Source: Sminthopsis crassicaudata (lineage: Eukaryota). From it: DNA of 64,000 nt. Below the pieces are notes generated by a model. The model ran no database searches. It saw only the letters and a list, made by a program, of their open reading frames with translations, and was not told the DNA's origin. The stretch lies in contig NC_133618.1 in assembly GCF_048593235.1 (NCBI RefSeq), forward strand, positions 29,112,478 through 29,176,477, in the 5' to 3' direction. The translations under genes and the position numbers were made by a program. This document shows positions 3,840 through 60,403 of this stretch, one piece after another. Every line of letters starts with the position of its first letter. The first letter of the stretch is position 1.

Positions 3840-5917
3840 TTAAGCTTTGAACTTGCAGAGGTAGAGGTGCTTCTTCTGACAAGATGCATCTTTCCACTTC
3901 TGGAATCCTGCAGAGAGATGGTCTGGATTCAGTTGAGGGACAAGGTAGGACCGAGGGGCCTAGTCTGAGGACCGTGGCTTCCTGGCCACAGAGTCTCCGC
4001 TCATTCAAGATTGTCCTTGAGTCCCAAGAAGAACAGAGAATGAAGATGGGAAAAGGAGGGAAGTAGAGAACCAAGAAGGAGGGAAGCAGAAGAAAAGGAA
4101 GAAGGGGAAAGAGGTCAAGTGAAAGAAAAGTAAGATGGAAGAACACAAGGAGAAGAGGATGCAGAGGGGGAGGGTTGGAGCTCACCAGACTCAGGAGTCA
4201 GGCTCACACAGTGGTTAGGATCGGTCTTTGCTGGGAAACCCGTCTCCCAGGCCTGGTAGAGGTAAAGGGCGTTGCTGCTCCATTTCCACCTGCGATTCTG
4301 GGTGAGAGGGTTGGGAAGGAATATTAGGGAAGAGGGAGACCTCCCACATCTACCTATTTTATATAATAACTCCTTATAATAACAGACCAACTGCACCAAA
4401 CCAGGCTCATTCTGTTCCCTAAGTCTTCCATGGTGCTGTGACCCGGCTGCTGCTTCTGCCATTGGGCAGCTCCAGCCTGTTCTGCCCCATCACGTTCTCT
4501 CTGGAGACCCAGGCAGCGCCACCCTCCCTCCCTCTGCCAGAAACCCTCCCCTGTCTCCTGCCAGTCCCTCTTCTGCCTGGCTCTGGCCCCAGGCCCTGCC
4601 CTGAGCTCCCTGAGCCTCTTGGGGAGTCTGAGGCTGGGTCTCTTGGACTGTTCCTCAAATGCAAGATTTCCTTCTTGGGACCCTGGTCTCCATTAAGTGC
4701 AGGGCCTGGGAAGGCCTCTGGGGGATGATGAGAATTCACAGATCACACAGGACTCGCTCATTGCAAAGAATGGGCAGAGACATGGAAGTGAAACTGTGGG
4801 TTGGTGAGTCCCCAGGAGCCCTGGGAGAGATGCAATCCCCCTCTCACCCCAGAGACCCCACAGACCCTTCTCCCTGCCCCCACCTGCTGCCCCCTGGATT
4901 TCTCCTATTCTTCCTCATGCTTCTGCACTTTTAGGGTCTCGGACCCTCAGAACTCATAGGATCCTCCCCCCCCCATATCACTGTTCCCCTTCTTTCCAGG
5001 ACTCAGACAGGGACAGGACCTCGGTCATACCTTGTTGGGGTCGTGCAGCCCGATCCAGACTGGGCTCTGACCCACCCCGTTCTCCATGATCATGGTGGCC
5101 ACAAAGGCGGCTTCAGCCTCGTTGAGCAGGGAGCCCAGGTGGCCCGAGGGGTAGCTCTGGCACAGCAGCTGTGGAGGGCAGGGAGCAGGTAAATGTGTGG
5201 GGGAGGGAGCAAAGGAGGCAGGAGAAGGCTCCTGGGAGCCTCAGGGGACAGGGTGGTCAATAGAGGAGGAGAAAAGGCTAGAGGGACCATGGTGAGATGT
5301 AACATGGGATACAAGGATTGATATTGTGGGAAATGGGGGGTCCATGAAACACAAGAAAGGGTAATCAAAGCTCTGAAGTCACCTGAGAAGGGAAAGTCTG
5401 GGTGACAGGTGAGGGTTTAGGGACTCATGGTGGCCACACTGATGATCCCAAGGGACATTGGGAAAGGGAGACAGACCCTGCCCCCTCCCAGGGCCCTCTC
5501 CAGAACCCACCTCAGCAGTGTTCCAGGTCTCCTGGGGACCCAATACTCCATAGCAGTGGGAGCCATGGAAGCCAAAGCCCTGGGGGCAGGAGCTCCTGGC
5601 AGAGGGGGGTGCAGGGGCCTCCTGCTTGCCTGGGGAGGGAGGAGAGCAGTTTCAGGGGAGCACAGCTGAGGTTCCTGCTCCCTGCAATCAGTCCTTGAAC
5701 CCTAAAAGCTCCCAACCCCTTCTTCTCTGCCTCACTGTGCACCCTCCTTCCATCCAACCCCTTCCCTTTCCCTCTTACTGTGTCCAAGCCCCTGTTCTGG
5801 GCCCAGGTGGGCAGTCAGAGGGAGGCTGAGGGACCCACCTTGTGTCAGGCAGGGGAGCAGCAGGCAGGCGAGGAGCAGCCCTGAGATGCTGGGGGACATT
5901 GTGGCAGACAGAGTCAT
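3840..5917 (-). CDS. REG1/REG3-like: REG-family C-type lectin, copy 1 (spliced, 171 aa, intact)
   Basis: Coding exons 5917-5839, 5629-5511, 5168-5031, 4297-4186, 3907-3840, all GT-AG and in phase. Translation: MTLSATMSPSISGLLLACLLLPCLTQGKQEAPAPPSARSSCPQGFGFHGSHCYGVLGPQETWNTAELLCQSYPSGHLGSLLNEAEAAFVATMIMENGVGQSPVWIGLHDPNKNRRWKWSSNALYLYQAWETGFPAKTDPNHCVSLTPESGFQKWKDASCQKKHLYLCKFKA*. Signal peptide, six CTLD cysteines, WIGLHDP motif, and exon layout of REG genes. Confidence 0.95.
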
Positions 5918-12495: not shown

Positions 12496-14717
12496 TTAAG
12501 CTCTGAACTTGCAGAGGTAGAGGTTCTTCTTCTGACAAGGTTCATCTTTCCACCTCTGGAATCCTGTGGAGAAATGGTCTAGGTTCAGCTGAGGCACAGG
12601 TTAGGGCAGGACATTCCCAGTTTGATGACTTTAGCTTCCCAGCCACAGGGTCTCCACTCATTCAATTGTCCTTGAGGTCCCCAGAAGAAAGGAGAATGAA
12701 GACAGGGAAAGGAGGGAAGTAGAAGACAAGGAAGGAAGGAGGCTGTACAAAAGAAAGAGGAGGGAAAAGGAAAGAAAACTAAGAAGAAGTTTGGGAATTG
12801 GACAAGAGAGGAAAGAAGATGATAAATTAGGGGGAAAGAAAAGAGAAAAGGCACAATGAGGAGAGCAAGAGAGAGGAGAGGAGTCACTCTCATATTCTTG
12901 GAAGGAGGTGCCCTCATTCCTCCAGGCTCTCACACAGCGCCAGGAGAAGAGAATGCTCTTGCAGAGAAGGAAGGGGTTGGAGCTCACCAGACTCAGGAGT
13001 CAGGCTCACACAGTGGTTAGGATTGCTCTTTGCTGGGAAGCCCGTCTCCCAGGCCTGGTAGAGGTAAAGGGCGTTGCTGCTCCATTTCCACCTGCGATTC
13101 TGGGGGAGAGGGTTGGGAAGGGGGCGGTTAGGGAAGAGGGAGACCCCCCCCCACATCTACCTCTTTTATATAATAACTCCTTATAATAACAGACCAACTG
13201 CACCAAACCAGGCTCATTCTGTTCCCTAAGTCTTCCATGGTGCTGTGACCTGGCTGCTGCTTCTGCCATTGGGCAGCTCCAGCCTGTTCTGCCCCATCAT
13301 GTTCTCTCTGGGAGACCCAGACAGAACCACCCTCCCTCCCTCTGCCAGAAACCCTCCCCTGTCTCCTGCCAGTCCCTCTTCTGCCTGGCTCTGGCCCCAG
13401 GCCCTGCCCTGAGCTCCCTGAGCCTCTTGGGGAGTCCGAGGCTGGGTCTCTTGGACTGTTCCTCAAATGCAAGATTTCCTTATTGGGACCCTGGTCTCCA
13501 TTAAGTGCAGGGCCTGGGAAGGCCTCTGGGGGATGATGAGAATTCACAGATCACACAGGACTCGCTCATTGCAAAGAATGGGCAGAGACATGGAAATGAA
13601 ACTGTGGGTTGGTGAGTCCCCAGGAGCCCTGGGAGAGATGCAATCCCCCTCTCGCCCCAGAGACCCCACAGACCCTTCTCCCTGCCCCCACCTCCTGCCC
13701 CCTGGATTTCTCCTATTCTTCCTCATGCTTCTGCACTTTTAGGGTCTCGGACCCTCAGAACTCATAGGATCCTACGCCCCCACACATCACTGTTCCCCTT
13801 CTTTCCAGGACTCAGACAGGGACGGCCTCTTGGTCATACCTTGTTGGGGTCGTGCAGCCCGATCCAGACTGGGCTCTGACCAACCCCATTCTCCATGATC
13901 ATGGTGGCCACAAAGGCGGCTTCAGCCTCGTTGAGCAGGGAGCCCAGGTGGCCCGAGGGGTAGCCCTGGCACAGCAGCTGTGGAGGGCAGGGAGCAGGGC
14001 TGGGTAAATGTGGGAGTCAGGAGCTAAGGAGGCAGAAGAAGGCTCCTGGGAGCTTCATAGGATAAGGTGGTCAATAGAGGAGGAGAAGAGGCTAAACGGA
14101 CCATGGTGAGATGTACCAGGGGTACAAAGATTGCTATTGTGGGAAGTGGGGGGTCCATGAAAAACCAAAAAAGGAGAGCAAAGCTCTGGAGTCACCTGAG
14201 AAGGGAAGGTCTGGGTGACACGTGAGGGCTTAGGGACTCATGGTGGCCACACTGATGACCCCAAGTGACATTGGGAAAGGGAGACAGACCCTGCCCCCTC
14301 CCAGGGCCCTCTCCAGAACCCACCTCGGCAGTGTTCCAGGTCTCCTGGGGACCCAATACTCCATAGCAGTGGGAGCCATGGAAGCCAAAGCCCTGGGGGC
14401 AGGAGCTCCTGGCAGAGGGGGGTGCAGGGGCCTCCTTCTGGCCTGGGGAGGGAGGAGAGCAGTTGAGGTTCCTGCTCCCTGCACCTCAGTCTTTGAATCC
14501 TACAGACCCCCAACCCCTCTCCTCTGTCCCACAGTGCCCACCCTGCTGCTGTCCAGCCCCTTCCCTTTCCCTCTTACTGTGTCCAAGCCCCTGTTCTGGG
14601 CCCAGGTGGGCAGTCAAAGGGAGGCCTGAGGGACCCACCTTGTGTCAGGCAGGGGAGCAGCAGGCAGGCGAGGAGCAGCCCTGAGACTCTGGGGGACATC
14701 ATGGCAGGCAGTGTCAT
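12496..14717 (-). CDS. REG1/REG3-like: REG-family C-type lectin, copy 2 (171 aa, intact)
   Basis: Exons 14717-14639, 14442-14324, 13977-13840, 13099-12988, 12563-12496. Prosegment QKEAPAPPSAR; exon 5 loop AWETGFPAKSNPNHC; C-terminus FQRWKDEPCQKKNLYLCKFRA*. Confidence 0.95.
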
Positions 14718-15111
14718 CTGATTCTGGGGAGGAGACAAGAGAACCCCTGATCTCCTGCCCAAGGACCCTGAGAAGGGACAAGGATAATGGCCAAGACCTC
14801 GGAAGCCCCAGGCTGCTGCTGTTCCCCTGGTCTCTGGGCCCCGGCTGGGACTGAGTTCCCTCTTCTCTCCTCCTTCTTCCCTTCCTGAGCCTCAGAAATC
14901 TTCAGACCAGGAGTAAGACAGAATCCGGGAGCCCTGGACAGGGTGGACTTGGGAGAAGATGTACCCTTCAGGGTAGCTTAGGAAGGACATATCCTGGCCT
15001 TCCCCCCAAGGTACCGGACTCCTGGAGCAGCTGCCGCCTCTCCCCCCGGGAAAGGAAGGGCCTCTGGATCTGCAGGGACCCCGTCTCCCAGCCCTTCTCT
15101 CCCTTACTTAC

Positions 15112-15554
15112 CTGGTGGAAGGAATCGTGTGTCGGAGGAGCAGAGGAGGACGGAACCTTTATAGGGAGAGGACCCATTATGGGGGCAGGGCTGGGGATGG
15201 AGGGAGGGCCCGAGCACAGGGGCTGGGAGGGGCAGGGGCTTCCTGGAACAGGGCGAGGTCTTCCTCAGTTTGGGGTCAGGAGCAGAGAGGAGCCCTGGGT
15301 TCTTCCCACAATGTGAGGTAGAGACCCATGGCTGCCTCCTGCCCCAAAGCTCGCCAGCTGCCACGTTCCCACAGCCAGGGGAGATTTCTGGGAAGGTTAG
15401 TGATTGGGGGAAAAGGGAACTCAAGGGAATGAGGGAACTTCCTGCCGGGAAAGGTGTAGTGTCAGAGACCTGGCCTTGGAGAAGGAGGGAATGCCAGTCA
15501 AGGGAGCCACGTTTTCCTGATAAAAACCCTCTGTCTTTCCATTAATTCCTGGAA
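15112..15554 (-). promoter_or_regulatory. Copy 2 promoter and non-coding exon 1
   Basis: TATAAA 15163-15158; donor at 15112/15111; GAS 15240-15248, 15386-15394, 15546-15554; E-box+RBPJ site 15355-15372. Confidence 0.8.
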
Positions 15555-21453: not shown

Positions 21454-23649
21454 TTAAGCTCTGAACTTGCAGAGGTAGAGGTTCTTCTTCTGACAAGGTT
21501 CATCTTTCCACCTCTGGAATCCTGTGGAGAAATGGTCTAGGTTCAGCTGAGGCATAGGTTAGGGCAGGACAGCCCCAATCTAAACACTGTGGCTTCCCGG
21601 CCACAGGGTCTCCACTCATTCAATATTGTCCTTGAGGTCCCCAGAAGAAAGGAGAATGAAGACAAGAAAAGGAGGGAGACTGTACAAAAGAAAGAGGAGG
21701 GAAAAGGAAAGAAAACTAAGAAGAAGTTCGGGAATTGGAGAAGAGAGGAAAGAAGATGATAAATTGGGGGGAAAGAAAAGAGAAAAGGCACAAAGAGGAG
21801 GGCAAGAGAGAGGAGAGGAGTCACTCTCATATTCTTGGAAGAAGGTGCCCTCATTCCTCCAGGCTCTCACACAGCGCCAGGAGAAGAGAATGCTTTTGCA
21901 GAGAAGGAAGGGGTTGGAGCTCACCAGACTCAGGAGTCAGGCTCACACAATAGTTAGGATTGGTCTTTGCTGGGAAGCCCGTCCCCCAGGCCTGGTAGAG
22001 GTAAAGGGCGTTGCTGCTCCATTTCCACCTGCGATTCTGGGGGAAAGGATTGGGAAGGAGGCGGTTAGGGAAGAGGGAGACCCCCCACATCAACCTCTTT
22101 TATATAATAACTCCTTATAATAACAGACCAACTGCACCACACCCGGCTCATTCTGTTCCCTATGTCTTCCATGGTGTTGTGACCCGGCTGCTGCTTCTGC
22201 CATTGGGCAGCTCCAGCCTGTTCTGCCCCATCACGTTCTCTCTGGGAGACCCAGACAGAACCACCCTCCCTCCCTCTGCCAGAAACCCTCCCCTGTCTCC
22301 TGCCAGTCCCTCTTCTGCCTGGCTCTGGCCCCAGGCCCTGCCCTGAGCTCCCTGAGCCTCTTGGGGAGTCCGAGGCTGGGTCTCTTGGACTGTTCCTCAA
22401 ATGCAAGATTTCCTTCTTGGGACCCTGGTCTCCATTAAGTGCAGGGCCTGGGAAGGCCTCTGGGGGATGATGAGAATTCACAGATCACACAGGACTCGCT
22501 CATTGCAAAGAATGGGCAGAGACATGGAAGTGAAACTGTGGGTTGGTGAGTCCCCAGGAGCCCTGGGAGAGATGCAATCCCCCTCTCACCCCAGAGACCC
22601 CACAGACCCTTCTCCCTGCCCCCACCTGCTGCCCCCTGGATTTCTCCTATTCTTCCTCATGCTTCTGCTCTGTTAGGGCCTCGGACCCGCAGAACTCATA
22701 TCATCCTCCCCCCCACATCACTGTTCCCCTTCTTTCCAGGACTCAGACAGGGACAGGCCCTCGGTCATACCTTGTTGGGGTCATGCAGCCCGATCCAGAC
22801 TGGGCTCTGACCCACCCCGTTCTCCATGATCATGGTGGCCACAAAGGCAGCCTCAGCCTCGTTGAGCAGGGAGCCCAGGTGGCCCGAGGGGTAGCCCTGG
22901 CACAGCAGCTGTGGAGGCAGGGAGCAGGGCTGGGTAAATGTGGGCGTCAGGAGCTAAGGAGGCAGAAGAAGGCTCCTGGGAGCTTCATAGGATAAGGGTG
23001 GTCAATAGAGGAGGAGAAGAGGCTAAAGTGACCATGGTGAGATGTACCAGGGGTACAAAGATTGCTATTGAGGGAAGTGGGGGGTCCATGAAACACCAAA
23101 AAAGGAGAGCAAAGCTCTGGAGTCACCTGAGAAGGGAAGGTCTGGGTGACAGGTGAGGGCTTAGGGACTCATGGTGGCCACACTGATGACCCCAAGTGAC
23201 ATTGGGAAAGGGAGACAGACCACACATCCTCCCAGGGCCCTCTCCAGAACCCACCTCGGCAGTGTTCCAGGTCTCCTGGGGACCCAATACTCCATAGCAG
23301 TGGGAGCCATGGAAGCCAAAGCCCTGGGGGCAAGAGCTCCTGGCAGAGGGGGGTGCAGGGGCCTCCTGCTGGCCTGGAGAGTGAGGAGAGCAGTTGATGT
23401 TCCTGCTCCCTGCACCTCAGTCTTTGAATCCTACAGACCCCCAACCCCTTCTTCTCTGTCCCACAGTGCCCACCCTGCTGCTGTCCAGCCCCTTCCCTTT
23501 CCCTCTTACTGTGTCCAAGCCCCTGTTCTGGGCCCAGGTGGGCAGTCAGAGGGAGGTCTGGGGGACCCACCTTGTGTCAGGCAGGGGAGCAGCAGGCAGG
23601 CGAGGAGCAGCCCTGAGACTCTGGGGGACATCATGGCAGGCAGTGTCAT
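21454..23649 (-). CDS. REG1/REG3-like: REG-family C-type lectin, copy 3 (171 aa, intact)
   Basis: Exons 23649-23571, 23373-23255, 22908-22771, 22036-21925, 21521-21454. Prosegment QQEAPAPPSAR; loop AWGTGFPAKTNPNYC. Confidence 0.95.
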
Positions 23650-51664: not shown

Positions 51665-52018
51665 CTCTGATTCTGGGGAGTAGACAAGAGAAATCCTTAT
51701 CTCCCACCCAAGGACCATGGGGAGAAGGGACAAGGACAATGGTCGAGACCTCAGGAGCCCCGGGCTGCTGCTGGTCTCCTGGTCTCTGGGCCCAGGCTGG
51801 GTCTGAGATCCCTCCTTTCTCCTTCTCCCCTTCCGGGGTCTCAGGGAGTATGTAAATCTGGGTGCAGGACAGAATCTGGATGGTCCAGTGAACAGCTTTC
51901 CTTCTATCATAATATATTAGAAATGACCATCTAATGGCATCTCCCTCCAAGATGGGAAGGAAATCGTCTCAGGAGCCTGTAGGGACCTGATCTCCCAGAC
52001 CTTATCTCCTTTACTTAC

Positions 52019-52429
52019 CAGACTGGTAGACTGAAGGGATAATGGATCTGACCAGAAGAGGATAGAACCTTTATAGAGAGAGGACCCAAGTGGGTGTAGA
52101 TATTGGGAGGAGCTTAAAAGAAGGAGACTTGGCAGGGACAGGGGGATGGAGGGAGGGTTAGAACACAGGTGCTGTGGGGGACAGGGGGATTCCTGGAAGA
52201 GGTGAGGTCTTCCTCCGCCTGGGTTCAGGAGCAGATCAGACCACTGCTTTCTTCCCATAATATGAGGTAGAGGCATATGACTGGCTCCTGCCCCAAAGCA
52301 CACCAGCTGCTATATTCCCATAGCCATGGGACACCTTGATGTTGTTTGATCATTGAAGGAAGAGGAAAGAATCATGGGATTGAGTGAGCCTTCTGCAGGG
52401 TTTGGATGGAAAAGACCAAGTTCTGGGAA
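52019..52429 (-). promoter_or_regulatory. Copy 6 divergent promoter and non-coding exon 1
   Basis: TATAAA 52075-52070; donor CTG|GTAAGT at 52019/52018; GAS TTCCTGGAA 52190-52198 and TTCTGGGAA 52421-52429; CAGCTG-N5-TTCCCA 52304-52320, retained although flanking sequence is diverged. Confidence 0.75.
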
Positions 52430-52727
52430 AGGTGTAGTGTCAGAGACTTTGGCTTTGGAGGAGGGAATTCCAGTCAGTGGACCAGAGGGAACTTGACTGG
52501 ATCTTCTAACTTCCTATAATTACTGAAATTCCCCAGACAAGAAAGATTTTCAGGTTCTTGGGAAGGGCCTCTCATTCTCTAGAGTGTATTTGGGGTCCAT
52601 TGACACAATCTATAGAGAACAGAGTTTTCTGTAGCTTCTTTTAGGAGAAAACTGCTGCCTAAGGAGAGAGATAAGAGGATGTAAGCAGAACCAAGTGGTA
52701 AATCTCCCAAAATCAAAAGAAAATTGA

Positions 52728-55649
52728 GGGTGGAGAGGACACATGCTTCTTTCTGATCTTCTCCCACAAACCCTCAACTAATTACCAAACCCAGCCTCTG
52801 AATTAGCTCTGGACTGGCAGAATCCACGAATATTGAGAGTGCAGCAAATTACCAGCAGAAGATAATTTCAAATAACACTAGAAAAGGTCTGTTTTGATTG
52901 GGCACAGGAGGAGGTGGCCAGACACAGGCAGGCAAGAAGAGCACAGGGACCAGCACATACTGTACAGACCTGAGGTGGTGCAGTTTCCATGGGGTGGTGC
53001 AGACTCCATGCTGTGGGGAATCTACAGGGAGGATTCTATAGCAGTGTTGGCTATTCTCCCATGGTTGCAAGCCAGCAGATCATCAGACTAGTTATAAGAC
53101 ATCCAACACAAACACACAAGTAAAGAGTGAACCCCAAAGCACCAGAATTTTGAGGGGCCTGGCCACACCCACCCAGCACCAGAAGTAAACACTGACCCAG
53201 TATAGTCATTGCTGCTTGTAGAGGAAGCTTGGAGAACCTCCCTTGTCCTAAAAGTAAATCTTAACTTTAAAAAAAAATGAGTAAAGAGGCAAAGAGAACT
53301 CTGACCATAGATAGTTTTATGATGGAGAACAGATTTCAGACCCTGAGGAGACTAAAAGCAGATTGTCTCCAGATGAAGCCCCAAAAGGTGGTATAACCTA
53401 TTCCCCATAACACAAGGCTCTTCTAGAAGAAATTAAAAGGATATTAAAAGAGAGCTAGAAGAAAAATGGGGAAAGGAAATGAAAACTTTGCAAGAGGGTT
53501 TGGAAAAAGCATACAATCCATTAAAAATAGATTTGATAAAATGGGAAAAGAAAACAACTCCATGAAAAACAATCTGTGAAATGGAAAAGGAAAATAACTC
53601 CCAGGAAAACAGAATTTGTGAAATGGGAAAAAAAATTCCATAAAACAAAACAACTCATTTAAAAACTCAATTGGGAAAATAAATAAACAAATAAACAAAC
53701 AAATGAATGAAAAAATAAAATACACTAAAACAAAAAAATGTGGCACAAAAAAACCAAACAAAAACTAAAAATAAAAACTCAATTGGACAAATACAAAAAG
53801 AAGCAAAAAAAGTAAATGAAGAAAATAATTCACTAAAAATCGGAACTGAATAAATGAAAATGTATGACTCAATGAGACATCAAGAATCAGTCAAGCAAAA
53901 CCAAAAGAAAAAAAGAAAAAAAATTAGGAAAAAATGTAAAATTCCTAATTGGGAAAACAACTGACCTAGAAAATAGATCTAGGAGAGACAATGTAAGCAT
54001 TTTTGGAGTCCCTAAAACCATGATGAACAAAAGAGCCTAGACACTATTTTCCAGGAAATCATCAAAGAGAACTTCTCTGATGTCATAGAATCAGAAGGTA
54101 AAATAGCCATTGAAAGAATTCACCAAACACTTCCTGAAACAGACCCTAAAATTAAAATCCCAAGGAATATCATGGCTAAATTTCAGAACTATTGGATCAA
54201 GGAAAAATATTATAAGTAGCCAGAAAAACACAATTCAAATACCAAGGAGCCACAATAAGGATTACCCAGGATCTAGCAGCTTCCACCTTAAAGGATCAAA
54301 GGGCCTGGAATCTGATATTCCAAAAGACAAAGGAACTTGGAATGCAGCTAAGAATAAACTACCCTGATAAACTGAGCATTTTCTTCTAGGGAAGAAGATG
54401 GGCATTCAATGAAACAGGTGAATTACATTTATTTCTGATGAAAAGACCAAAGCTAAACAAAAAGTTTGACTTCCAAATATTGGACTCAAGAGAAGTATAA
54501 AAAGGTAAAAAAGAACTCTTGAGAACTGTATTTCTGTTATGGGTATACATAAAGAGTCCATGTATAATTTGATTTTACTGTTATAATATAAAAAAGGAAC
54601 TTGAGGTGGAAAGAGAATTGTATCACAAAAAAGGGAAAGTGGAGTTAAAATGAGGGAAATTATATTTCGCCAAGAGGCAAAGGAAATCTATTATATTTGG
54701 GGAAAGAAGGGAGGGGGATGAACATTGTATGGATCTTACTCTCATCAGATTTAGCTCAAAGAGAAAATACTAGACATATTTGGTTTACAGAGAAACTTCT
54801 CTCACCTTATTGAAAAGTGGGAGGGGAAAGGCAAAAAGGGAAGGAATAGGCTAAATAGAAGGGAAAACAGAAATAGTAGGGGAAAGGTATAAGAAAGGGA
54901 GAGGGATTTTGAAGGGGGATGGATTCTAAAGAGAGAAGGCTTCTTAAGGCAAGTGGTGCTTATAAGCTAAATACTGGGGAGGAGGGGAAGTGGAAAAGAA
55001 AAGAGAAAAGTATAATCTGGGGATAATAAGATGGCAGGAAATACAGAATTTGTAGTTTTAACTGTAAATGTGAATGGGGTGAACTCTCCTATAAAGTGAA
55101 AGCACATAGCAGATTGGATTAAAAACCAGAATCCAATTGTTCAGGAGTGAAGAGAGCCATCTACACCCAGAGAGAGAACTATCGGAATTGAGTGTGGATT
55201 ACAACATAGGATTTTCATTCTTTCTGTTATTGTTTGCTTGCATTTTTGTTTTCTGTCCCAGGTTTTTTTTTCTTTCTAGATCTGATTTTTTTTTGTGCAT
55301 CAAGATATCTGTATGGATATGTATACGTATATTGGATTTAAGATATATTTTACATGTATTAGAATACTTCCCATCTAGAGGAGAGGATGGGGGGAAGGAG
55401 GGGAAAATTTGGAACAGAAGGTTTTGCAAGGGTCAGTGTTGAAAAATTACCAATGCATATGTTTTGTAAATAAAAAGCTATAATAAAAAAGGAAAAGAAA
55501 GAAAAATAGTGTTTCTAAAATATCAACATTTTAGAATTTTTCAATTTTAGACACAATTACTAAGTTGTGCTTTCAGAGGAAAAAAGGAGTTATCACAATT
55601 TACAATTAATAAAAATCCAAATTAATAAATTACTTTATAAATTGTCAAA
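52728..55649 (+). mobile_element. L1 with 5' UTR, decayed ORF1, ORF2 almost fully deleted, 3' UTR and probable 3' transduction
   Basis: ORF1 from ATG 53277 (FQEIIKENF...IERIH...PRNIMAKFQ); ORF2 start 55031 (MAGNTEFVVLTVNVNGVNSPIK) joined at ~55135 to the 3' UTR; 13-bp TSD AAAAGAAAATTGA at 52715-52727 and 55650-55662. Confidence 0.85.
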
Positions 55650-57585
55650 AAAAGAAAATTGAATAAATAGCCCCAAATCTCAACTCAGGTGGAGACCCTC
55701 AGCATTCATCTACTGCCTGTCTACTTTTGATTCCCAACTCCCTTCTTTTTAGAAAATTCTCTGCTAGAGATTTAAAATGTGTTCCTGTTAGCAAGACTTG
55801 GGCAATTGGAAATTGGTTTGCTTTCCACAAATCCACAACTTTGGACCACACTGGCAAGTTCTTGGAGTACCCAGTGGGTGATATTTTTTGGATTATCCCC
55901 AGTAGACCATGCATGATCTAATTTAAACATCCTGGTCTACCTGGATACAGTTCCCAGAAGAGCCCAAAATGTGACCCCATCCTGAGGTCACTGGCATCAT
56001 TCCTGCCTTTGTTCTGGTCACTAGACATGGCCATCCAGCATGTTGACAATTAGCCTGCAATATTGTATTAACCTGCTGCTGAGTCTGCTTGTCTATACCT
56101 TCTTCCAACTCTAGTCTCTCCTCCATTTAACCGCAAATGCAAAAAAAAACAATCTTTCCATGTCAAATCCCTTCTTATAAATTTCAGTGGAGCTCTATAG
56201 CCTCCAAAATCAAATACAAAATTCTCTGTCAGAAGACTTTCCTGTTCTGAGAAGAGTGAAGGAAGACCATTTCAGTCCAAGAACCATCTGTTAGTGGAGC
56301 AATATTTACTAGAAGTGAAACAAACCAGGTGGGAATACCATGATGACATCACTAAGAGATATCCCTGGCCTTATACCTTTGGAGGCTTAAATTACTCATC
56401 AATCATGGTCCTAATTTCACCATTCCTGGCCCACAAGGATACCCCTCTATAAGTTCGTCCTTGCTTAGGCTGAAACCAGTTCAATTTCTAGAGAGGAAAC
56501 TCAGCAGTTGACTTTTGGACATTAAAAAAAAAATCTCTTCCCTTTTATGAATGATCTCTTCATTGTGTTCCTGTTGCTGTTATGTCTATATGGGGAAGAC
56601 TTTTCCCCAAATAAAGACGAAAATGTTTACTTGCTCCTCTTCTTACTATGTGGTCTCTTCAAAGGTCTTTCTTCTACTAGTAATTATGCAAGAGCACATA
56701 AATTATGGTTTTAGTGAATATAGACTCATAAAACACATGGAACCATAGATTTCCTTCTTTAGGGGACCTGCCCTAAAATTGGGGTGTACTTCCAACATCA
56801 CACTTAGGTGATAGAAGATGTATTCAGAAAGAGCAGTCATCTTCTCAACCAGGACAATAGGACACACCTCAAGGGCATTTGGCTCACTCTGAGACTAAAT
56901 CCAGGTGGAAGCTTAGAATATCAAGAGATCAAACTGAATGTGTAACTTTATCAATGTACAAACTGCTTCTTCTGAGAGGAGGACCTGCCTCAACAATCAG
57001 CTTCTCCACATGGTCCTTCCGACACGTATAGAGATTGAGAAGAGAATAAAAACTCCAGATGTGTCAATCCCAGAAGCCTCCATCAGGACAAAGTTGGGAA
57101 GACCAAGCAAAGATGGCGTAAAGCCAAATACAAGACTTTTTATAGGTCAAGCAGGCCAGGGACTTCTGGATGCAAAACACCAGATGCTGGGGCAGGAGCC
57201 CAAAAGGTTCCATGGTGACCACAGGCTCAAATGAAGTAAATCTCAGTGACAACAGGGATTAGGACACATTGAGAGAGGGCCAAAAAAGTGAGTTTTGTAA
57301 AGAAAGATCCAATGAAAGGGACCAATCTCACTTGAATTTAAATGAGGTTATGGGTCCTGCCTCTCTAATACTTGTTTCAGGGAAAGATTACATGACCAGA
57401 TGTGAAATCCAAAGATAGAGGTTCAAGTCCTCCTAACTGTGATGCTGGGAATGTCTCTCACCTCCACTTTCCTCATCGCTAAAATTGGAGATGGTATTAA
57501 AGGTGGAAATGAGCAATGTTTTTATAAACCATGAAGCACCATCATGCTTAAAAAAAAGAATTCAGAGTATCAGGTCAGAAAGTAG

Positions 57586-57591
57586 TTTATT
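57586..57591 (-). terminator. Polyadenylation signal AATAAA, copy 7
   Basis: Homologous to the copy 1 signal and kept in the diverged 3' UTR about 600 nt after the stop. Confidence 0.65.
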
Positions 57592-58190
57592 CAAAGACAC
57601 ATAACTATTTGAAATGTCTACAACAGAACGATCCACAAACAGAGCACCATGGGAAGGAATCTGAAGAAGAGCTTCCCTGAGTCATTTGATTATGAGAAGA
57701 TCACAACAGAGACCACAGTCCCTACCATTCCCACAACACAGGAAAAGGCAGAAATTCATCCCCTAAATCTAACTTGGATTTCAAATTTCAAGGGATGACA
57801 TTTTTGTCTTGAACGCTCTCTTTGACGCCTTGGTTAAGAACTCTCACATTCACAAGATTTCTGAAAGGAACTAAAACTGGAACTTTTCCACTTTTTAACA
57901 ACAATGTGACCATTTATATTCAGGGTCTGTATCAACTTTGAGCTACTTGTGGTATGGAAGATAAAAAGCACTTGAGCAGGTAGTGCTGAGTGCAGTGGAG
58001 GGTGAATGGAAGAACAGGAACAGGAGAAGTGGTGAGAGTGGTCAGATAACAGAAGGGAGGGTGGTCTGGTGAGGAAGGATGATGGAAAGAAGATGCTCTG
58101 GGAGGGCAAAGAGATTATGGCCACAGCCCTCCTGGGCTGTATTTGGATGCAAGCACCCGAATTTTGGGCTCTTCTTCTGTCTGCTCCCCT

Positions 58191-60403
58191 TTAAGCTCTG
58201 AACTTGCAGAGGTAGAGGTTCTTCTTCCGACAATCTTCATTTTTCCACTTCTGGAATCCTGTGGAAAGATGGTCTGGGTTCAGTTGAGGGGACAGCTTAG
58301 AGCAAGAGATCCATGGTCTGATGATTGTGGCTTCCTGGCCACAGGGTCTCCTCATTCAAGATAGTTCTCAAGATAACAAGAAGAAAGGAGAATGAAGATA
58401 GGAAAAAGGGAAATAGAAGACAAGGAAGAAGGGAAGCAGAAGAAGAGGAAGAGGAGGAAAAAGGAAAGAAAGCTAAGATGGATGAAGGTTGGGAATTAGA
58501 GGAGAGGGAAGAAGATGATAAATTAGGGGGAAAGAAAAGAGAAAGGATAAAAAGAAGGGAGGGCAAGAGAAAGGAGAGGAGTCACTCTCACATTCTTGGA
58601 AGGAAGTGCCCCCATGCCCCCAGGCTTTCAGACAGCCCAAGGAGAAGAGGATGCTCCTGTGCAGCTGGCAGAGGGGGAGGGTTGGCGCTCACCAGACTCA
58701 GTAGTCAGGCTCACACAGTAGTTGGGTTGGCTGTTCGTTGGGAAGCCCGACTCCCAGGCCTGGTAGAGGTAAAGGGCATTGCTGCTCCATTTCCACCTGC
58801 GATTCTGGGAGAGAAGGTTGGGAAGGGGGCAGTTAGGGAAGAGTGGGACCCCCCACCTGCCTCTTTTATATAATAACTCGTTATAATAAACAGACCAACT
58901 GCACATGAACTTTTCTTTAGCCCAGACCTCCCAAACCAGGCTCATTCTGTTCCCTAAGTCTTCCCTGGTGCTGTGACCCCAGCTGCCATTGGGCAGCACC
59001 ACCCTATTCTGCTCCATAACGTTCTCTCTGGGAGACCCAGACAGTGCCACCCTCCCTCCTTCTGCCAGAAACCCTCCCTTGTCTCCTGCCCCAGACCCTC
59101 CTCTAAGGGGTCTCTTGGGGAGACTTAGGCCCAGATTGCCTTGGGCTCTTCCCCCATGCAAGGTTTCCTTATTGTGACCTTGTCTCCATGAGGGTCGTGA
59201 CTGAGAAGTCCCCTCAGGGAGATGCTGGGAACTCAACCCAGACATGGGCAGAAAATAATTTCCCATTGAACCAAAGGGATGGGCAGTGATGGTGGACTCA
59301 GATGGGGGATAGGTAAGTATTAAAAACCTGGGGGGTGGAAGTGTAGGCTTCCTCTGGCCCAGGACCCAACCCTCCAAGCTCCTGCCCCTTTTCTACTCAC
59401 TGGCTTCCCTAGTTCTAGTGCTTTTCTTAGAGTCCTGGACCTACGAGACTGGTAGGAACCACCTCCTCATCAGCTCCACACACACTGTTGTTCCCCTTCT
59501 CCCCAGTCTCAGACAGGGACAGGCCCTCGGTCATACCTTGTTGGGGTCGTGCAGACCGATCCAGACTGGGTTCTGACCAACCCCGTTCTCCATGATCATG
59601 GTGGCCACAAAGGTAGCCTCAGCCTCATTGAGCAGGGAGCCCAGGTGGCCTGAGGGGTAGCCCTGGCACAGCAGCTGTGGAGGGCAGGGAGCAGGTAAAT
59701 GTGTGGGGGAGGGAGCAAAGGAGGCAGGAGAAGGCTCCTGGGAGCCTCAGGGGACAGGGTGGTCAATAGAGGTAGAAAAGAGGTTAAAGGGACCATGGTG
59801 AGATGGCTATGGGGCACAGGGATTACTTTTGTGGGAAGTGGGGGTAAGAAACACCAGAAAGGGGGAGCAAAGCTCTGGAGTCACCTGAAAAGGGAAGGTC
59901 TGGGTGACAGGTGAGGGCTTACAGACTCATGGTGGCCACACTGATGTCGCCAAGGACATGGGGATAAGGAGACAGATCCCTCCCCCTCCCACAGCCTCTC
60001 CAGAACCCACCTCAGCAGTGTTCCAGGTTTCCTGAGGACCCAATACTCCATAGCAGTGGGAGCCATGGAAGCCAAAGCCCTGGGGGCAGGAGCTCCTGGC
60101 AGAGGGGGGTGCAGGGGCCTCCTGCTTGCCTGGGAAGGGAGGAGAGCAGTTGAGGTTCCTGCTCCCTGCACATCAGTCCTTGAACCCTACAAGCTCCCAA
60201 CCCCTTCTTCTCTGTCCCACAGTGCCCACCCTGCTGCTGTCCAGTCCCTTCCCTTTCCCTCTTACTGTGTCCAAGCCCTTTCTAGGCCCAGGTGGGCAGT
60301 CAGAGGGAAGCCTGAGGGACCCACCTTGTGTCAGGCAGGGGAGCAGCAGGCAGATGAGGAGCAGCCCTGAGACTCTGGGGGACATCATGGCAGGCAGCAT
60401 CAT
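58191..60403 (-). CDS. REG1/REG3-like: REG-family C-type lectin, copy 7 (171 aa, intact, most divergent lectin domain)
   Basis: Exons 60403-60325, 60129-60011, 59674-59537, 58804-58693, 58258-58191. Loop AWESGFPTNSQPNYCVSLTTESG; C-terminus FQKWKNEDCRKKNLYLCKFRA*. Confidence 0.95.

What the first reader, a model, noticed from the sequence alone, without database searches (positions are those of the whole stretch)
12496..14717. Protein looks like a REG3/REG1 mosaic, possibly a pre-split ancestral-type REG lacking the EPN loop
Seen: signal peptide M-x-LPAMMSPRVSGLLLACLLLPCLTQG and prosegment APAPPSAR|SSCP; exon 4/5 junction WIGLHDPNK|NRRWKWSS; 46-codon exon 4. From memory: REG3A starts MLPPMALPSVSWMLLSCLMLLSQVQG, mouse Reg3g has APSSR|SSCP and ends CKFKA (as copy 1 does), while REG1A has WIGLHDPKK|NRRWHWSS. 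REG3's peptidoglycan-binding EPN lies in a GTEPNGEG insertion absent here, and the canonical CTLD EPN/QPD position reads GFPA. Inference: an N-terminally REG3-like, loop-wise REG1-like lineage that could show which function (bactericidal or lithostathine-like) is ancestral.
Basis: partly seen in the sequence, partly recalled or inferred. Interest (0 to 1): 0.72.

Follow-up and report, generated by a model that had tools for sequence, protein, structure and literature searches.

The report
Marsupial REG lectin gene, tandem array
This is one of seven intact, near-identical copies of a secreted gut/pancreas-type lectin gene (REG family) in the fat-tailed dunnart. It looks like a blend of placental REG1 and REG3 because it keeps old features that each placental type later changed, so it is an ordinary family member with a modest evolutionary message.

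Summary
On the minus strand, 12496-14717 holds five coding exons with AG/GT borders. A TATA box and a short non-coding exon 1 lie upstream.

The gene is identical to Sminthopsis crassicaudata RefSeq XP_074141095.1, "lithostathine-1-alpha-like". It is copy 2 of seven intact copies in the window. The scan had already noted this array and similar REG genes just upstream.

It passes every REG-family test tried. It lacks the REG3 five-residue EPN insertion, as do all 30-odd marsupial REGs retrieved, a gecko relative and mannose-receptor-family lectin domains. The short loop is therefore ancestral and the REG3 loop derived.

The leader is closer to REG3 (38% against 27% identity). Exon 5 is closer to REG1 (53% against 35%). 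This fits retained ancestral states, not recombination.

Maximum-likelihood trees place marsupial REGs outside a REG1+REG3 clade (support 97-99/94-97), which favours the "pre-split" reading. AU tests (p 0.24-0.34) and quartet mapping cannot reject a sister relation to REG1. No REG4 or monotreme sequence could be obtained.

This is a new member of a known kind, of moderate-to-low interest.

The parts
15158..15163 (-). TATAAA box of copy 2
   Evidence: A conserved CTCCCTATAAAGG motif lies 411-448 nt upstream of the ATG in all seven copies.
15112..15135 (-). Inferred short non-coding exon 1. The start is approximate. It ends at a CAG|GTAAGT donor.
   Evidence: Sequence reading. It fits the six-exon REG gene plan (PMC6817481). 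No RNA evidence was obtained.
14639..14723 (-). Exon 2: 6 nt of 5' UTR, the ATG at 14717, and the signal peptide (residues 1-26 plus the first base of G27)
   Evidence: Acceptor AG at 14725-14724, donor GT.
14324..14442 (-). Exon 3: the prosegment QKEAPAPPSAR, the trypsin-type site R38|S39, and the start of the lectin domain
13840..13977 (-). Exon 4, 46 codons, ending ..VWIGLHDPNK
12988..13099 (-). Exon 5: NRRWKWSS.., the short loop without the REG3 insertion, and GFPA at the canonical EPN position
12496..12563 (-). Exon 6 coding part, ending ..LYLCKFRA and a stop codon. The end of the 3' UTR was not determined.
3840..5917 (-). Copy 1 coding span (= XP_074141094.1), intact, ends CKFKA
21454..23649 (-). 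Copy 3 coding span (= XP_074141096.1), intact
31594..33834 (-). Copy 4 coding span (= XP_074141097.1), intact
40553..42749 (-). Copy 5 coding span (= XP_074141098.1), intact
49482..51664 (-). Copy 6 coding span (= XP_074141099.1), intact
58191..60403 (-). Copy 7 coding span (= XP_074141100.1), intact, the most divergent copy

Best explanation
The locus is an intact six-exon REG-family gene of the fat-tailed dunnart. The REG family consists of free, secreted C-type lectin-like domains. RefSeq already predicts this gene as 'lithostathine-1-alpha-like'. It is copy 2 of a young tandem array with units of about 9 kb, seven copies in the window and at least eleven annotated in the genome.

Inferred mode of action: the 171-aa precursor loses a 27-residue signal peptide. 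The secreted proprotein carries an 11-residue prosegment that ends in Arg38. Trypsin in pancreatic juice or the gut lumen cuts there. This releases a 133-residue, three-disulfide lectin-like domain that binds its targets without calcium and probably self-assembles or aggregates microbes, as REG1 and REG3 proteins do. It cannot use the REG3 EPN loop for peptidoglycan binding, because it lacks that loop.

The 'REG3 head / REG1 loop' look is not a recombinant. The gene belongs to a marsupial-only set of REG lineages that kept ancestral character states. Eutherian REG1 later changed its leader. Eutherian REG3 later gained the five-residue EPN insertion and diverged across exon 5.

The most likely history (about 0.55) is that eutherian REG1 and REG3 split from each other after the marsupial-eutherian divergence, so marsupial REGs are co-orthologues of both.

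Shown here: gene structure, intactness, family membership, absence of the loop, the outgroup state of the loop, and exclusion from both eutherian clades. Inferred: secretion, tryptic activation, binding function and the order of the splits.
For: Gene model and splice sites. TATA box and exon 1. All seven copies are identical to consecutive RefSeq proteins XP_074141094-100 of S. crassicaudata.

Family: Pfam Lectin_C. PDB phmmer gives human lithostathine 1LIT 163 bits without gaps, REG3A 1UV0 122 bits with a five-residue length difference, and REG4 2KV3 101 bits. The AlphaFold2 model has mean pLDDT 74.8 with a confident core. Foldseek ranks 1QDD/1LIT first, then 4MTH/1UV0. The six cysteines are invariant across 74 REGs. 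The Arg of the trypsin site is kept in 24 of 27 marsupial, 16 of 21 REG1 and 22 of 26 REG3 sequences. Tryptic processing and the six-exon, 2-3 kb gene plan of REGs come from PMC6817481.

Loop: every marsupial REG has the short KNRRW-type loop, eutherian REG3 proteins have five extra residues with EPN, and gecko and mannose-receptor-family lectin domains have the short loop. The role of the EPN loop in peptidoglycan binding comes from PMC6817481 and PMC12530498.

Per-exon identity.

Trees: REG1 clade 100/98, REG3 clade 100/99, REG1+REG3 clade 99/95, 97/97 without exon 5, 98/94 with gecko outgroup only. Marsupial paralogue groups each span American and Australian species.

Selection among the seven copies: pN/pS is 0.12 for residues 28-129, so the core is under constraint.
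Against: The order of the splits is not settled. AU tests do not reject marsupial+REG1 (delta lnL 2.0, p 0.34; with gecko only 6.6, p 0.30) or marsupial+REG3 (6.0, p 0.24). Quartet mapping under LG+F+G4 prefers (REG1,marsupial) at 50% against 37%, and the answer depends on the outgroup: gecko gives 56-67% for (REG1,REG3), while the distant mannose-receptor domains favour (REG1,marsupial).

Outgroups are few and on long branches. REG4, monotreme and further sauropsid sequences are missing.

Absence of a REG3-type gene in marsupials rests on truncated hit lists (120 of 357 shown).

The model's long-loop region (residues 111-135) has low confidence.
Confidence: 0.7

Rival explanations
1. Simple REG1-side orthology. 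REG3 split off before the marsupial-eutherian divergence. The marsupial REGs are the sister group (co-orthologues) of eutherian REG1 only, and marsupials lost or never kept a REG3-type gene.
For: Overall similarity is higher to REG1: 163 against 122 bits and 49% against 43% identity over the mature protein. The loop length is identical to REG1. Quartet mapping gives 50-54% for (REG1,marsupial) overall, and exons 3, 4 and 6 lean that way. AU tests do not reject it (p 0.34 and 0.30). NCBI names these genes lithostathine-like.
Against: Full maximum-likelihood trees under the site-heterogeneous model always recover REG1+REG3 with support of 97-99/94-97, also without exon 5 and with the nearer outgroup only. 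The quartet preference comes mainly from the very distant mannose-receptor outgroups, which is the pattern expected from long-branch attraction to the long REG3 stem. The similarity to REG1 in exon 5 is a shared ancestral state, also seen in outgroups. This reading needs an extra loss of REG3 in marsupials. The REG1 leader, the Thr5 glycosylation site and five of six residues of the human REG1A acidic patch are not shared.
Confidence: 0.33
2. A REG3-side lineage: sister to eutherian REG3, keeping its leader, and either having lost the EPN insertion or having branched off before REG3 gained it.
For: The leader is 38% identical to REG3 against 27% to REG1 and has the REG3 length and the ML.P.M..PS motif. 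AU does not reject marsupial+REG3 (p 0.24). Exon 5 quartets tie between (REG1,REG3) at 41% and (REG3,marsupial) at 40%.
Against: It has the lowest likelihood of the three groupings (delta lnL 6.0). Only 12% of quartets support it overall, and 3-8% with the gecko outgroup for exons 3, 4, 3+4+6 and the whole mature protein. The leader cannot be rooted because the outgroup domains have none. Exon 5 is 35% identical to REG3 against 53% to REG1.
Confidence: 0.07
3. A true mosaic made by recombination or gene conversion between a REG3-like and a REG1-like parent gene.
For: Similarity switches along the gene: leader towards REG3, exon 5 towards REG1. Tandem arrays like this one do undergo conversion, as the patchwork of shared variants among copies 2-6 shows.
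Against: The same combination is present in all four or more deep marsupial paralogue groups across ten species. No REG3-type donor was found in any marsupial. In exon-wise trees the marsupial sequences form their own clade and do not nest in REG1 or REG3. The 'REG1-like' loop is also the outgroup state.
Confidence: 0.03

Closest known systems
Eutherian REG1 (lithostathine / pancreatic stone protein; human REG1A, PDB 1LIT and 1QDD)
   Same: Best sequence and fold match: 163 bits, gap-free over residues 34-170, about 50% identity, Foldseek rank 1. Same loop length and KNRRW motif. Same six-exon plan, the Arg trypsin site before xxCP, and six cysteines.
   Different: It is not nested in the REG1 clade. 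The leader is 27 residues of REG3 type instead of the 22-residue MAQT.. type. Thr5 is replaced by Pro. Only E33 of the acidic patch E30, D31, E33, D37, D72, D73 is kept. It is amplified to seven or more near-identical copies.
Eutherian REG3 (HIP/PAP, RegIII-gamma; human REG3A, PDB 1UV0 and 4MTH)
   Same: Leader length and motif. A prosegment ending in Arg that trypsin removes in REG3. The same fold (Foldseek E about 1e-14, 42-43% identity).
   Different: It lacks the five-residue insertion that carries the EPN motif used for peptidoglycan binding (PMC6817481). Exon 5 is only 35% identical. It lies outside the REG3 clade, which has 100/99 support.
REG4 (human, PDB 2KV3)
   Same: A secreted single lectin-like domain. 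No five-residue insertion is evident: 131 query residues align to 129 chain residues.
   Different: More distant (101 bits). REG4 genes have seven exons and lie on another chromosome (PMC6817481). This gene has six exons and sits in a REG cluster.
Other marsupial 'lithostathine-like' RefSeq predictions (Antechinus, Sarcophilus, Dromiciops, Vombatus, Monodelphis and others)
   Same: 61-96% identity, the same loop, leader and prosegment. Direct orthologues and paralogues. The dasyurid array copies form one clade at 100/98.
   Different: Nothing of kind. This copy differs from its neighbours at 3-16 of 171 residues.

Membership tests
REG family (secreted free C-type lectin-like domain) | Single C-type lectin-like domain of about 16 kDa behind a signal peptide | tested here: met
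   Pfam Lectin_C covers residues 59-169, E 5.9e-18. The top single-domain PDB matches are REG1A, REG3A and REG4. There is a hydrophobic 27-residue leader aligned to REG leaders.
REG family (secreted free C-type lectin-like domain) | Six-exon gene spanning 2-3 kb with a non-coding exon 1 | tested here: met
   Five coding exons with AG/GT borders, plus a TATA box and a short exon 1 with a GTAAGT donor. The span is about 2.6 kb. The criterion is from PMC6817481. Exon 1 has no RNA support.
REG family (secreted free C-type lectin-like domain) | Trypsin-sensitive Arg near the N-terminus, just before xxCP | tested here: met
   ..PPSAR38|SSCP. The column is Arg in 24 of 27 marsupial, 16 of 21 REG1 and 22 of 26 REG3 sequences. 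Actual cleavage was not tested.
REG family (secreted free C-type lectin-like domain) | Six conserved cysteines (three disulfides) and no canonical calcium/sugar motif | tested here: met
   C41, C52, C69, C142, C159 and C167 are invariant in 74 sequences. GFPA and WKD stand where gecko has GEPN and WND and mannose-receptor-family domains have GEPN/GEPT.
REG family (secreted free C-type lectin-like domain) | Expressed and secreted in pancreas or gut | not testable with these tools
REG3 subfamily | Five-residue loop insertion carrying EPN (peptidoglycan binding) | tested here: not met
   The loop reads DPNKNRRWKW. REG3 proteins read DPTxGxEPNxGGWEW.
REG3 subfamily | Groups with the REG3 clade in a tree | tested here: not met
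   The REG3 clade (100/99) excludes all marsupial sequences. A sister position is not rejected by AU (p 0.24) but is the least supported grouping.
REG1 subfamily | Short KNRRW loop | tested here: met
   The feature is also the outgroup state, so it does not define the subfamily.
REG1 subfamily | Groups with the REG1 clade in a tree | tested here: inconclusive
   It is never nested in REG1 (100/98). Maximum-likelihood trees put REG1 with REG3 (97-99/94-97). A sister position is not rejected (AU p 0.30-0.34), and quartets give 50%.
REG1 subfamily | REG1-type 22-residue leader, Thr5 O-glycan site and acidic surface patch of human lithostathine | tested here: not met
   The leader is 27% identical and four to five residues longer. 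Thr5 is Pro. Only one of six acidic residues is kept. The residues are taken from PMC6817481.
REG4 | Seven exons, separate locus, closest similarity to REG4 | tested here: not met
   Six exons. 101 bits to REG4 against 163 bits to REG1A. The gene lies in a REG tandem cluster.

The most novel reading that the evidence does not exclude
Marsupial REG genes descend from the still undivided REG1/REG3 ancestor, so the peptidoglycan-binding EPN loop of REG3 is a eutherian invention. Dasyurid marsupials instead amplified a short-loop REG into an array of eleven or more genes. The copies are constrained in the core (pN/pS 0.12) but vary freely on the canonical ligand-binding face (pN/pS about 1.1, residues 130-171). 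This would be an alternative route to a diversified set of gut lectins.
Probability: 0.35. Interest if true: 0.5.

Novelty: new member of a known kind. Interest (0 to 1): 0.33.

Why it matters
REG3 lectins are central to keeping gut bacteria away from the epithelium in mice and humans, and their peptidoglycan binding depends on the EPN loop. All marsupial REGs retrieved, together with the outgroups, have the short loop. This dates the EPN loop to the eutherian stem and means marsupials must do this job differently or with other surfaces.

The dunnart array offers natural variants for testing what a short-loop REG binds: seven or more near-identical genes that differ mainly on the canonical binding face.

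The gene itself is an ordinary REG-family member that RefSeq already predicts. The deeper claim, that it predates the REG1/REG3 split, is favoured here but not proven.

Tried and rejected
1. Outgroups. The third homologous-protein search, seeded with the gecko domain, found nothing. The exhaustive representative search was swamped by multi-domain lectins. No REG4, monotreme or further sauropsid REG could therefore be added.

3. Likelihood mapping with LG+C20 failed on a thread error and then timed out. It was rerun with LG+F+G4 and LG+G4.

4. Pseudogene or dead copies: rejected. All seven open reading frames, splice sites and TATA boxes are intact, and core pN/pS is 0.12.

5. Recombinant mosaic: rejected as the main reading (see rivals).

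6. Literature. Seven searches found no paper on marsupial REG genes in the held library.

7. The human lithostathine PDB chain (P0221) was left out of the trees.

Full report
**What is there.**
The finding lies on the minus strand. Reading it and splicing it gives five coding exons: 14717-14639, 14442-14324, 13977-13840, 13099-12988 and 12563-12496. All internal borders are AG/GT, and the reading frame is 171 codons.

A TATAAA box at 15163-15158 is followed by a short exon that ends CAG|GTAAGT at 15112. The acceptor lies 6 nt before the ATG. This adds a non-coding exon 1, so the gene has the six-exon, roughly 2.6 kb plan described for REG genes (PMC6817481).

**Identity and surroundings.**
A tblastn and blastn of the gene against the window found seven copies, all on the minus strand and 8.7-10.1 kb apart. 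All seven are intact, with the same exon lengths and splice sites. They differ at 2-22 of 171 residues.

The whole unit of about 9 kb, spacers included, is 95-98% identical among copies 1-6. Copy 7 is more divergent.

The seven proteins are identical to the consecutive RefSeq predictions XP_074141094 to XP_074141100 of Sminthopsis crassicaudata. The finding's gene is XP_074141095.1, "lithostathine-1-alpha-like". Further members (XP_074141093, 101, 103, 104) and a more distant paralogue (XP_074141092) show that the array runs beyond the window.

Earlier notes of this scan describe the same array and similar REG genes just upstream.

**Family membership.**
- Pfam finds one Lectin_C domain.
- Against solved structures, human lithostathine (REG1A, 1LIT) aligns without a gap over residues 34-170 at 163 bits. 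REG3A (1UV0) scores 122 bits with a five-residue length difference. REG4 scores 101 bits.
- An AlphaFold2 model (mean pLDDT 74.8) has a confident core and low confidence in residues 111-135. Foldseek ranks 1QDD/1LIT first and REG3A structures next.
- The six cysteines are invariant in an alignment of 74 REGs.
- The Arg before xxCP, where trypsin removes the prosegment of REG1 and REG3 (PMC6817481, PMC12530498), is kept.
- The canonical calcium/sugar motifs are gone: GFPA and WKD stand where gecko and mannose-receptor-family domains have GEPN, and where gecko has WND.

The gene is therefore a REG-family member by every feature I could test.

**The loop.**
Every marsupial REG where the scan could read the loop has the short loop of the KNRRW type, like eutherian REG1. 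This covers at least four old paralogue groups in ten species. Eutherian REG3 proteins carry five extra residues, usually with E-P-N, wherever the scan could read them.

The gecko relative P0099 and the second lectin domain of mannose-receptor-family proteins also have the short loop. REG4 shows no five-residue excess.

The short loop is therefore the ancestral state, and the REG3 EPN loop is derived. That loop mediates peptidoglycan binding (PMC6817481, PMC12530498).

**The 'mosaic'.**
Identity of copy 2 to 21 REG1 and 26 REG3 proteins, exon by exon:

| Exon | Identity to REG1 | Identity to REG3 |
|---|---|---|
| 2 (leader) | 27% | 38% |
| 3 | 40% | 36% |
| 4 | 54% | 50% |
| 5 | 53% | 35% |
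| 6 | 44% | 45% |

However, REG1 and REG3 are themselves only 34% identical in exon 5, and the outgroups share the short loop, so REG3 is the one that diverged there. REG1 is the one with the shorter, different leader.

All marsupial paralogue groups show the same combination, and no marsupial REG3-type donor was seen. The pattern is retention of ancestral states, not recombination.

**Phylogeny.**
The main tree had 83 sequences and 170-175 columns, run with IQ-TREE under LG+C20+F+G4 (PMSF). The gecko domains and three mannose-receptor-family domains served as outgroups.

| Analysis | Result |
|---|---|
| Full data | REG1 100/98; REG3 100/99; REG1+REG3 99/95; marsupials outside |
| Without exon 5 | REG1+REG3 97/97 |
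| Gecko outgroup only | REG1+REG3 98/94 |
| Exon 5 alone (42 columns) | Marsupials form their own clade (98/94); REG1 unresolved |

The order of the three groups is not secure, for three reasons:
- AU tests do not reject marsupial+REG1 (delta lnL 2.0, p 0.34; gecko only 6.6, p 0.30) or marsupial+REG3 (6.0, p 0.24).
- Four-cluster likelihood mapping under LG+F+G4 gives 37% for (REG1,REG3), 50% for (REG1,marsupial) and 12% for (REG3,marsupial).
- With the gecko as outgroup that mapping gives 56-67% for (REG1,REG3). The distant mannose-receptor domains pull it to (REG1,marsupial), as long-branch attraction to the long REG3 stem would.

I put the pre-split reading at about 0.55, a REG1-side sister position at about 0.33, and a REG3-side position at about 0.07.

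**Function.**
By homology, the product is secreted, activated by tryptic removal of an 11-residue prosegment, and acts as a calcium-independent lectin-like protein that self-assembles or aggregates targets.

It cannot bind peptidoglycan in the REG3 way. It also does not share the acidic patch or the Thr5 glycan site reported for human lithostathine: only E33 of six acidic residues is kept (residues from PMC6817481). The processed domain is near neutral, with pI about 7.6.

Among the seven copies, residues 28-129 are under strong constraint (pN/pS 0.12). The leader (1.74) and residues 130-171 (1.12) vary freely. Variable sites number 15 of 42 in residues 130-171, against 4 of 91 in the rest of the mature domain (Fisher p 6e-6). 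Residues 130-171 cover the positions of the canonical EPN and WND motifs. The copies therefore differ mainly on the classical ligand-binding face. The counts are small and the pairs are not independent, so this is a lead and not a demonstration of positive selection.

**Known or new.**
The gene is already predicted in RefSeq, and the family is well known. Seven searches of the held literature found no description of marsupial REG genes. I class it as a new member of a known kind.

The useful message is that the REG3 EPN loop is a eutherian novelty and that marsupials carry expanded short-loop REGs. Whether these predate the REG1/REG3 split remains open.

**Limits.**
- No REG4 or monotreme sequences were obtained.
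- Hit lists were truncated, so the absence of a marsupial REG3-type gene is provisional.

Noticed in passing
window 12496-49481 (copies 2-6): The array has a higher-order pattern. The spacing from copy 2 to 3 and from copy 4 to 5 is 8958 and 8959 bases. Copies 2 and 4 share E130/H141, while copies 3, 5 and 6 share G130/Y141. M94/V94 splits the copies differently. This suggests duplication of two-gene blocks plus gene conversion. In the RefSeq set, XP_074141093 pairs with 101, copy 6 with 103 and copy 7 with 104.
   Followed up: partly
window 24514-25376 and 29892-30471: Two stretches in the copy 3 to copy 4 spacer have no counterpart in the copy 2 unit. They make this spacer about 1.2 kb longer. 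The first coincides with the LTR foldback element noted earlier by the scan.
   Followed up: partly
window 51845-58190: The spacer between copies 6 and 7 has no megablast match to the standard unit. It shows strong AT skew at 52-56 kb and no open reading frame of 120 aa or more. It is probably decayed repeat insertions.
   Followed up: partly
proteins P0190, P0198, P0202, P0206, P0209, P0211: REG1-clade proteins occur in Afrotheria (Echinops, Chrysochloris) and Xenarthra (Tamandua), inside a 100/98 clade. None of the Laurasiatherian hits was of REG1 type. REG1 is therefore older than Euarchontoglires and was probably lost in Laurasiatheria, contrary to one speculation in PMC9650133.
   Followed up: partly
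proteins P0225, P0226, P0228, P0234, P0238, P0257 and others: Many Laurasiatherian proteins named 'lithostathine-like' by NCBI carry the REG3-type EPN insertion. The sampled ones (such as P0225, P0234, P0238, P0257) fall in the REG3 clade. The automatic names are not a guide to subfamily.
   Followed up: yes
protein P0099 (Gekko kuhli): This gecko protein has two lectin domains with the REG-like WIALHDP..W.W motif and a short loop. It still keeps the canonical EPN and WND sugar/calcium motifs. It looks like a sauropsid relative from before the loss of the canonical site.
   Followed up: partly
protein P0116 (Trichosurus vulpecula): This possum protein is named 'REG3-beta-like' but lacks the EPN insertion. 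It sits on a long branch, weakly attached as sister to REG1+REG3 (45/82). It may be a further old marsupial REG lineage.
   Followed up: no
proteins P0012, P0019, P0126: Some database models of marsupial REGs contain extra in-frame stretches at exon borders. They look like retained intron sequence or shifted splice sites, not real insertions.
   Followed up: no
They lie about 140 bases downstream of the stop codon of copy 2. I worked beside them and sent none of their letters to search tools afterwards.
   Followed up: no
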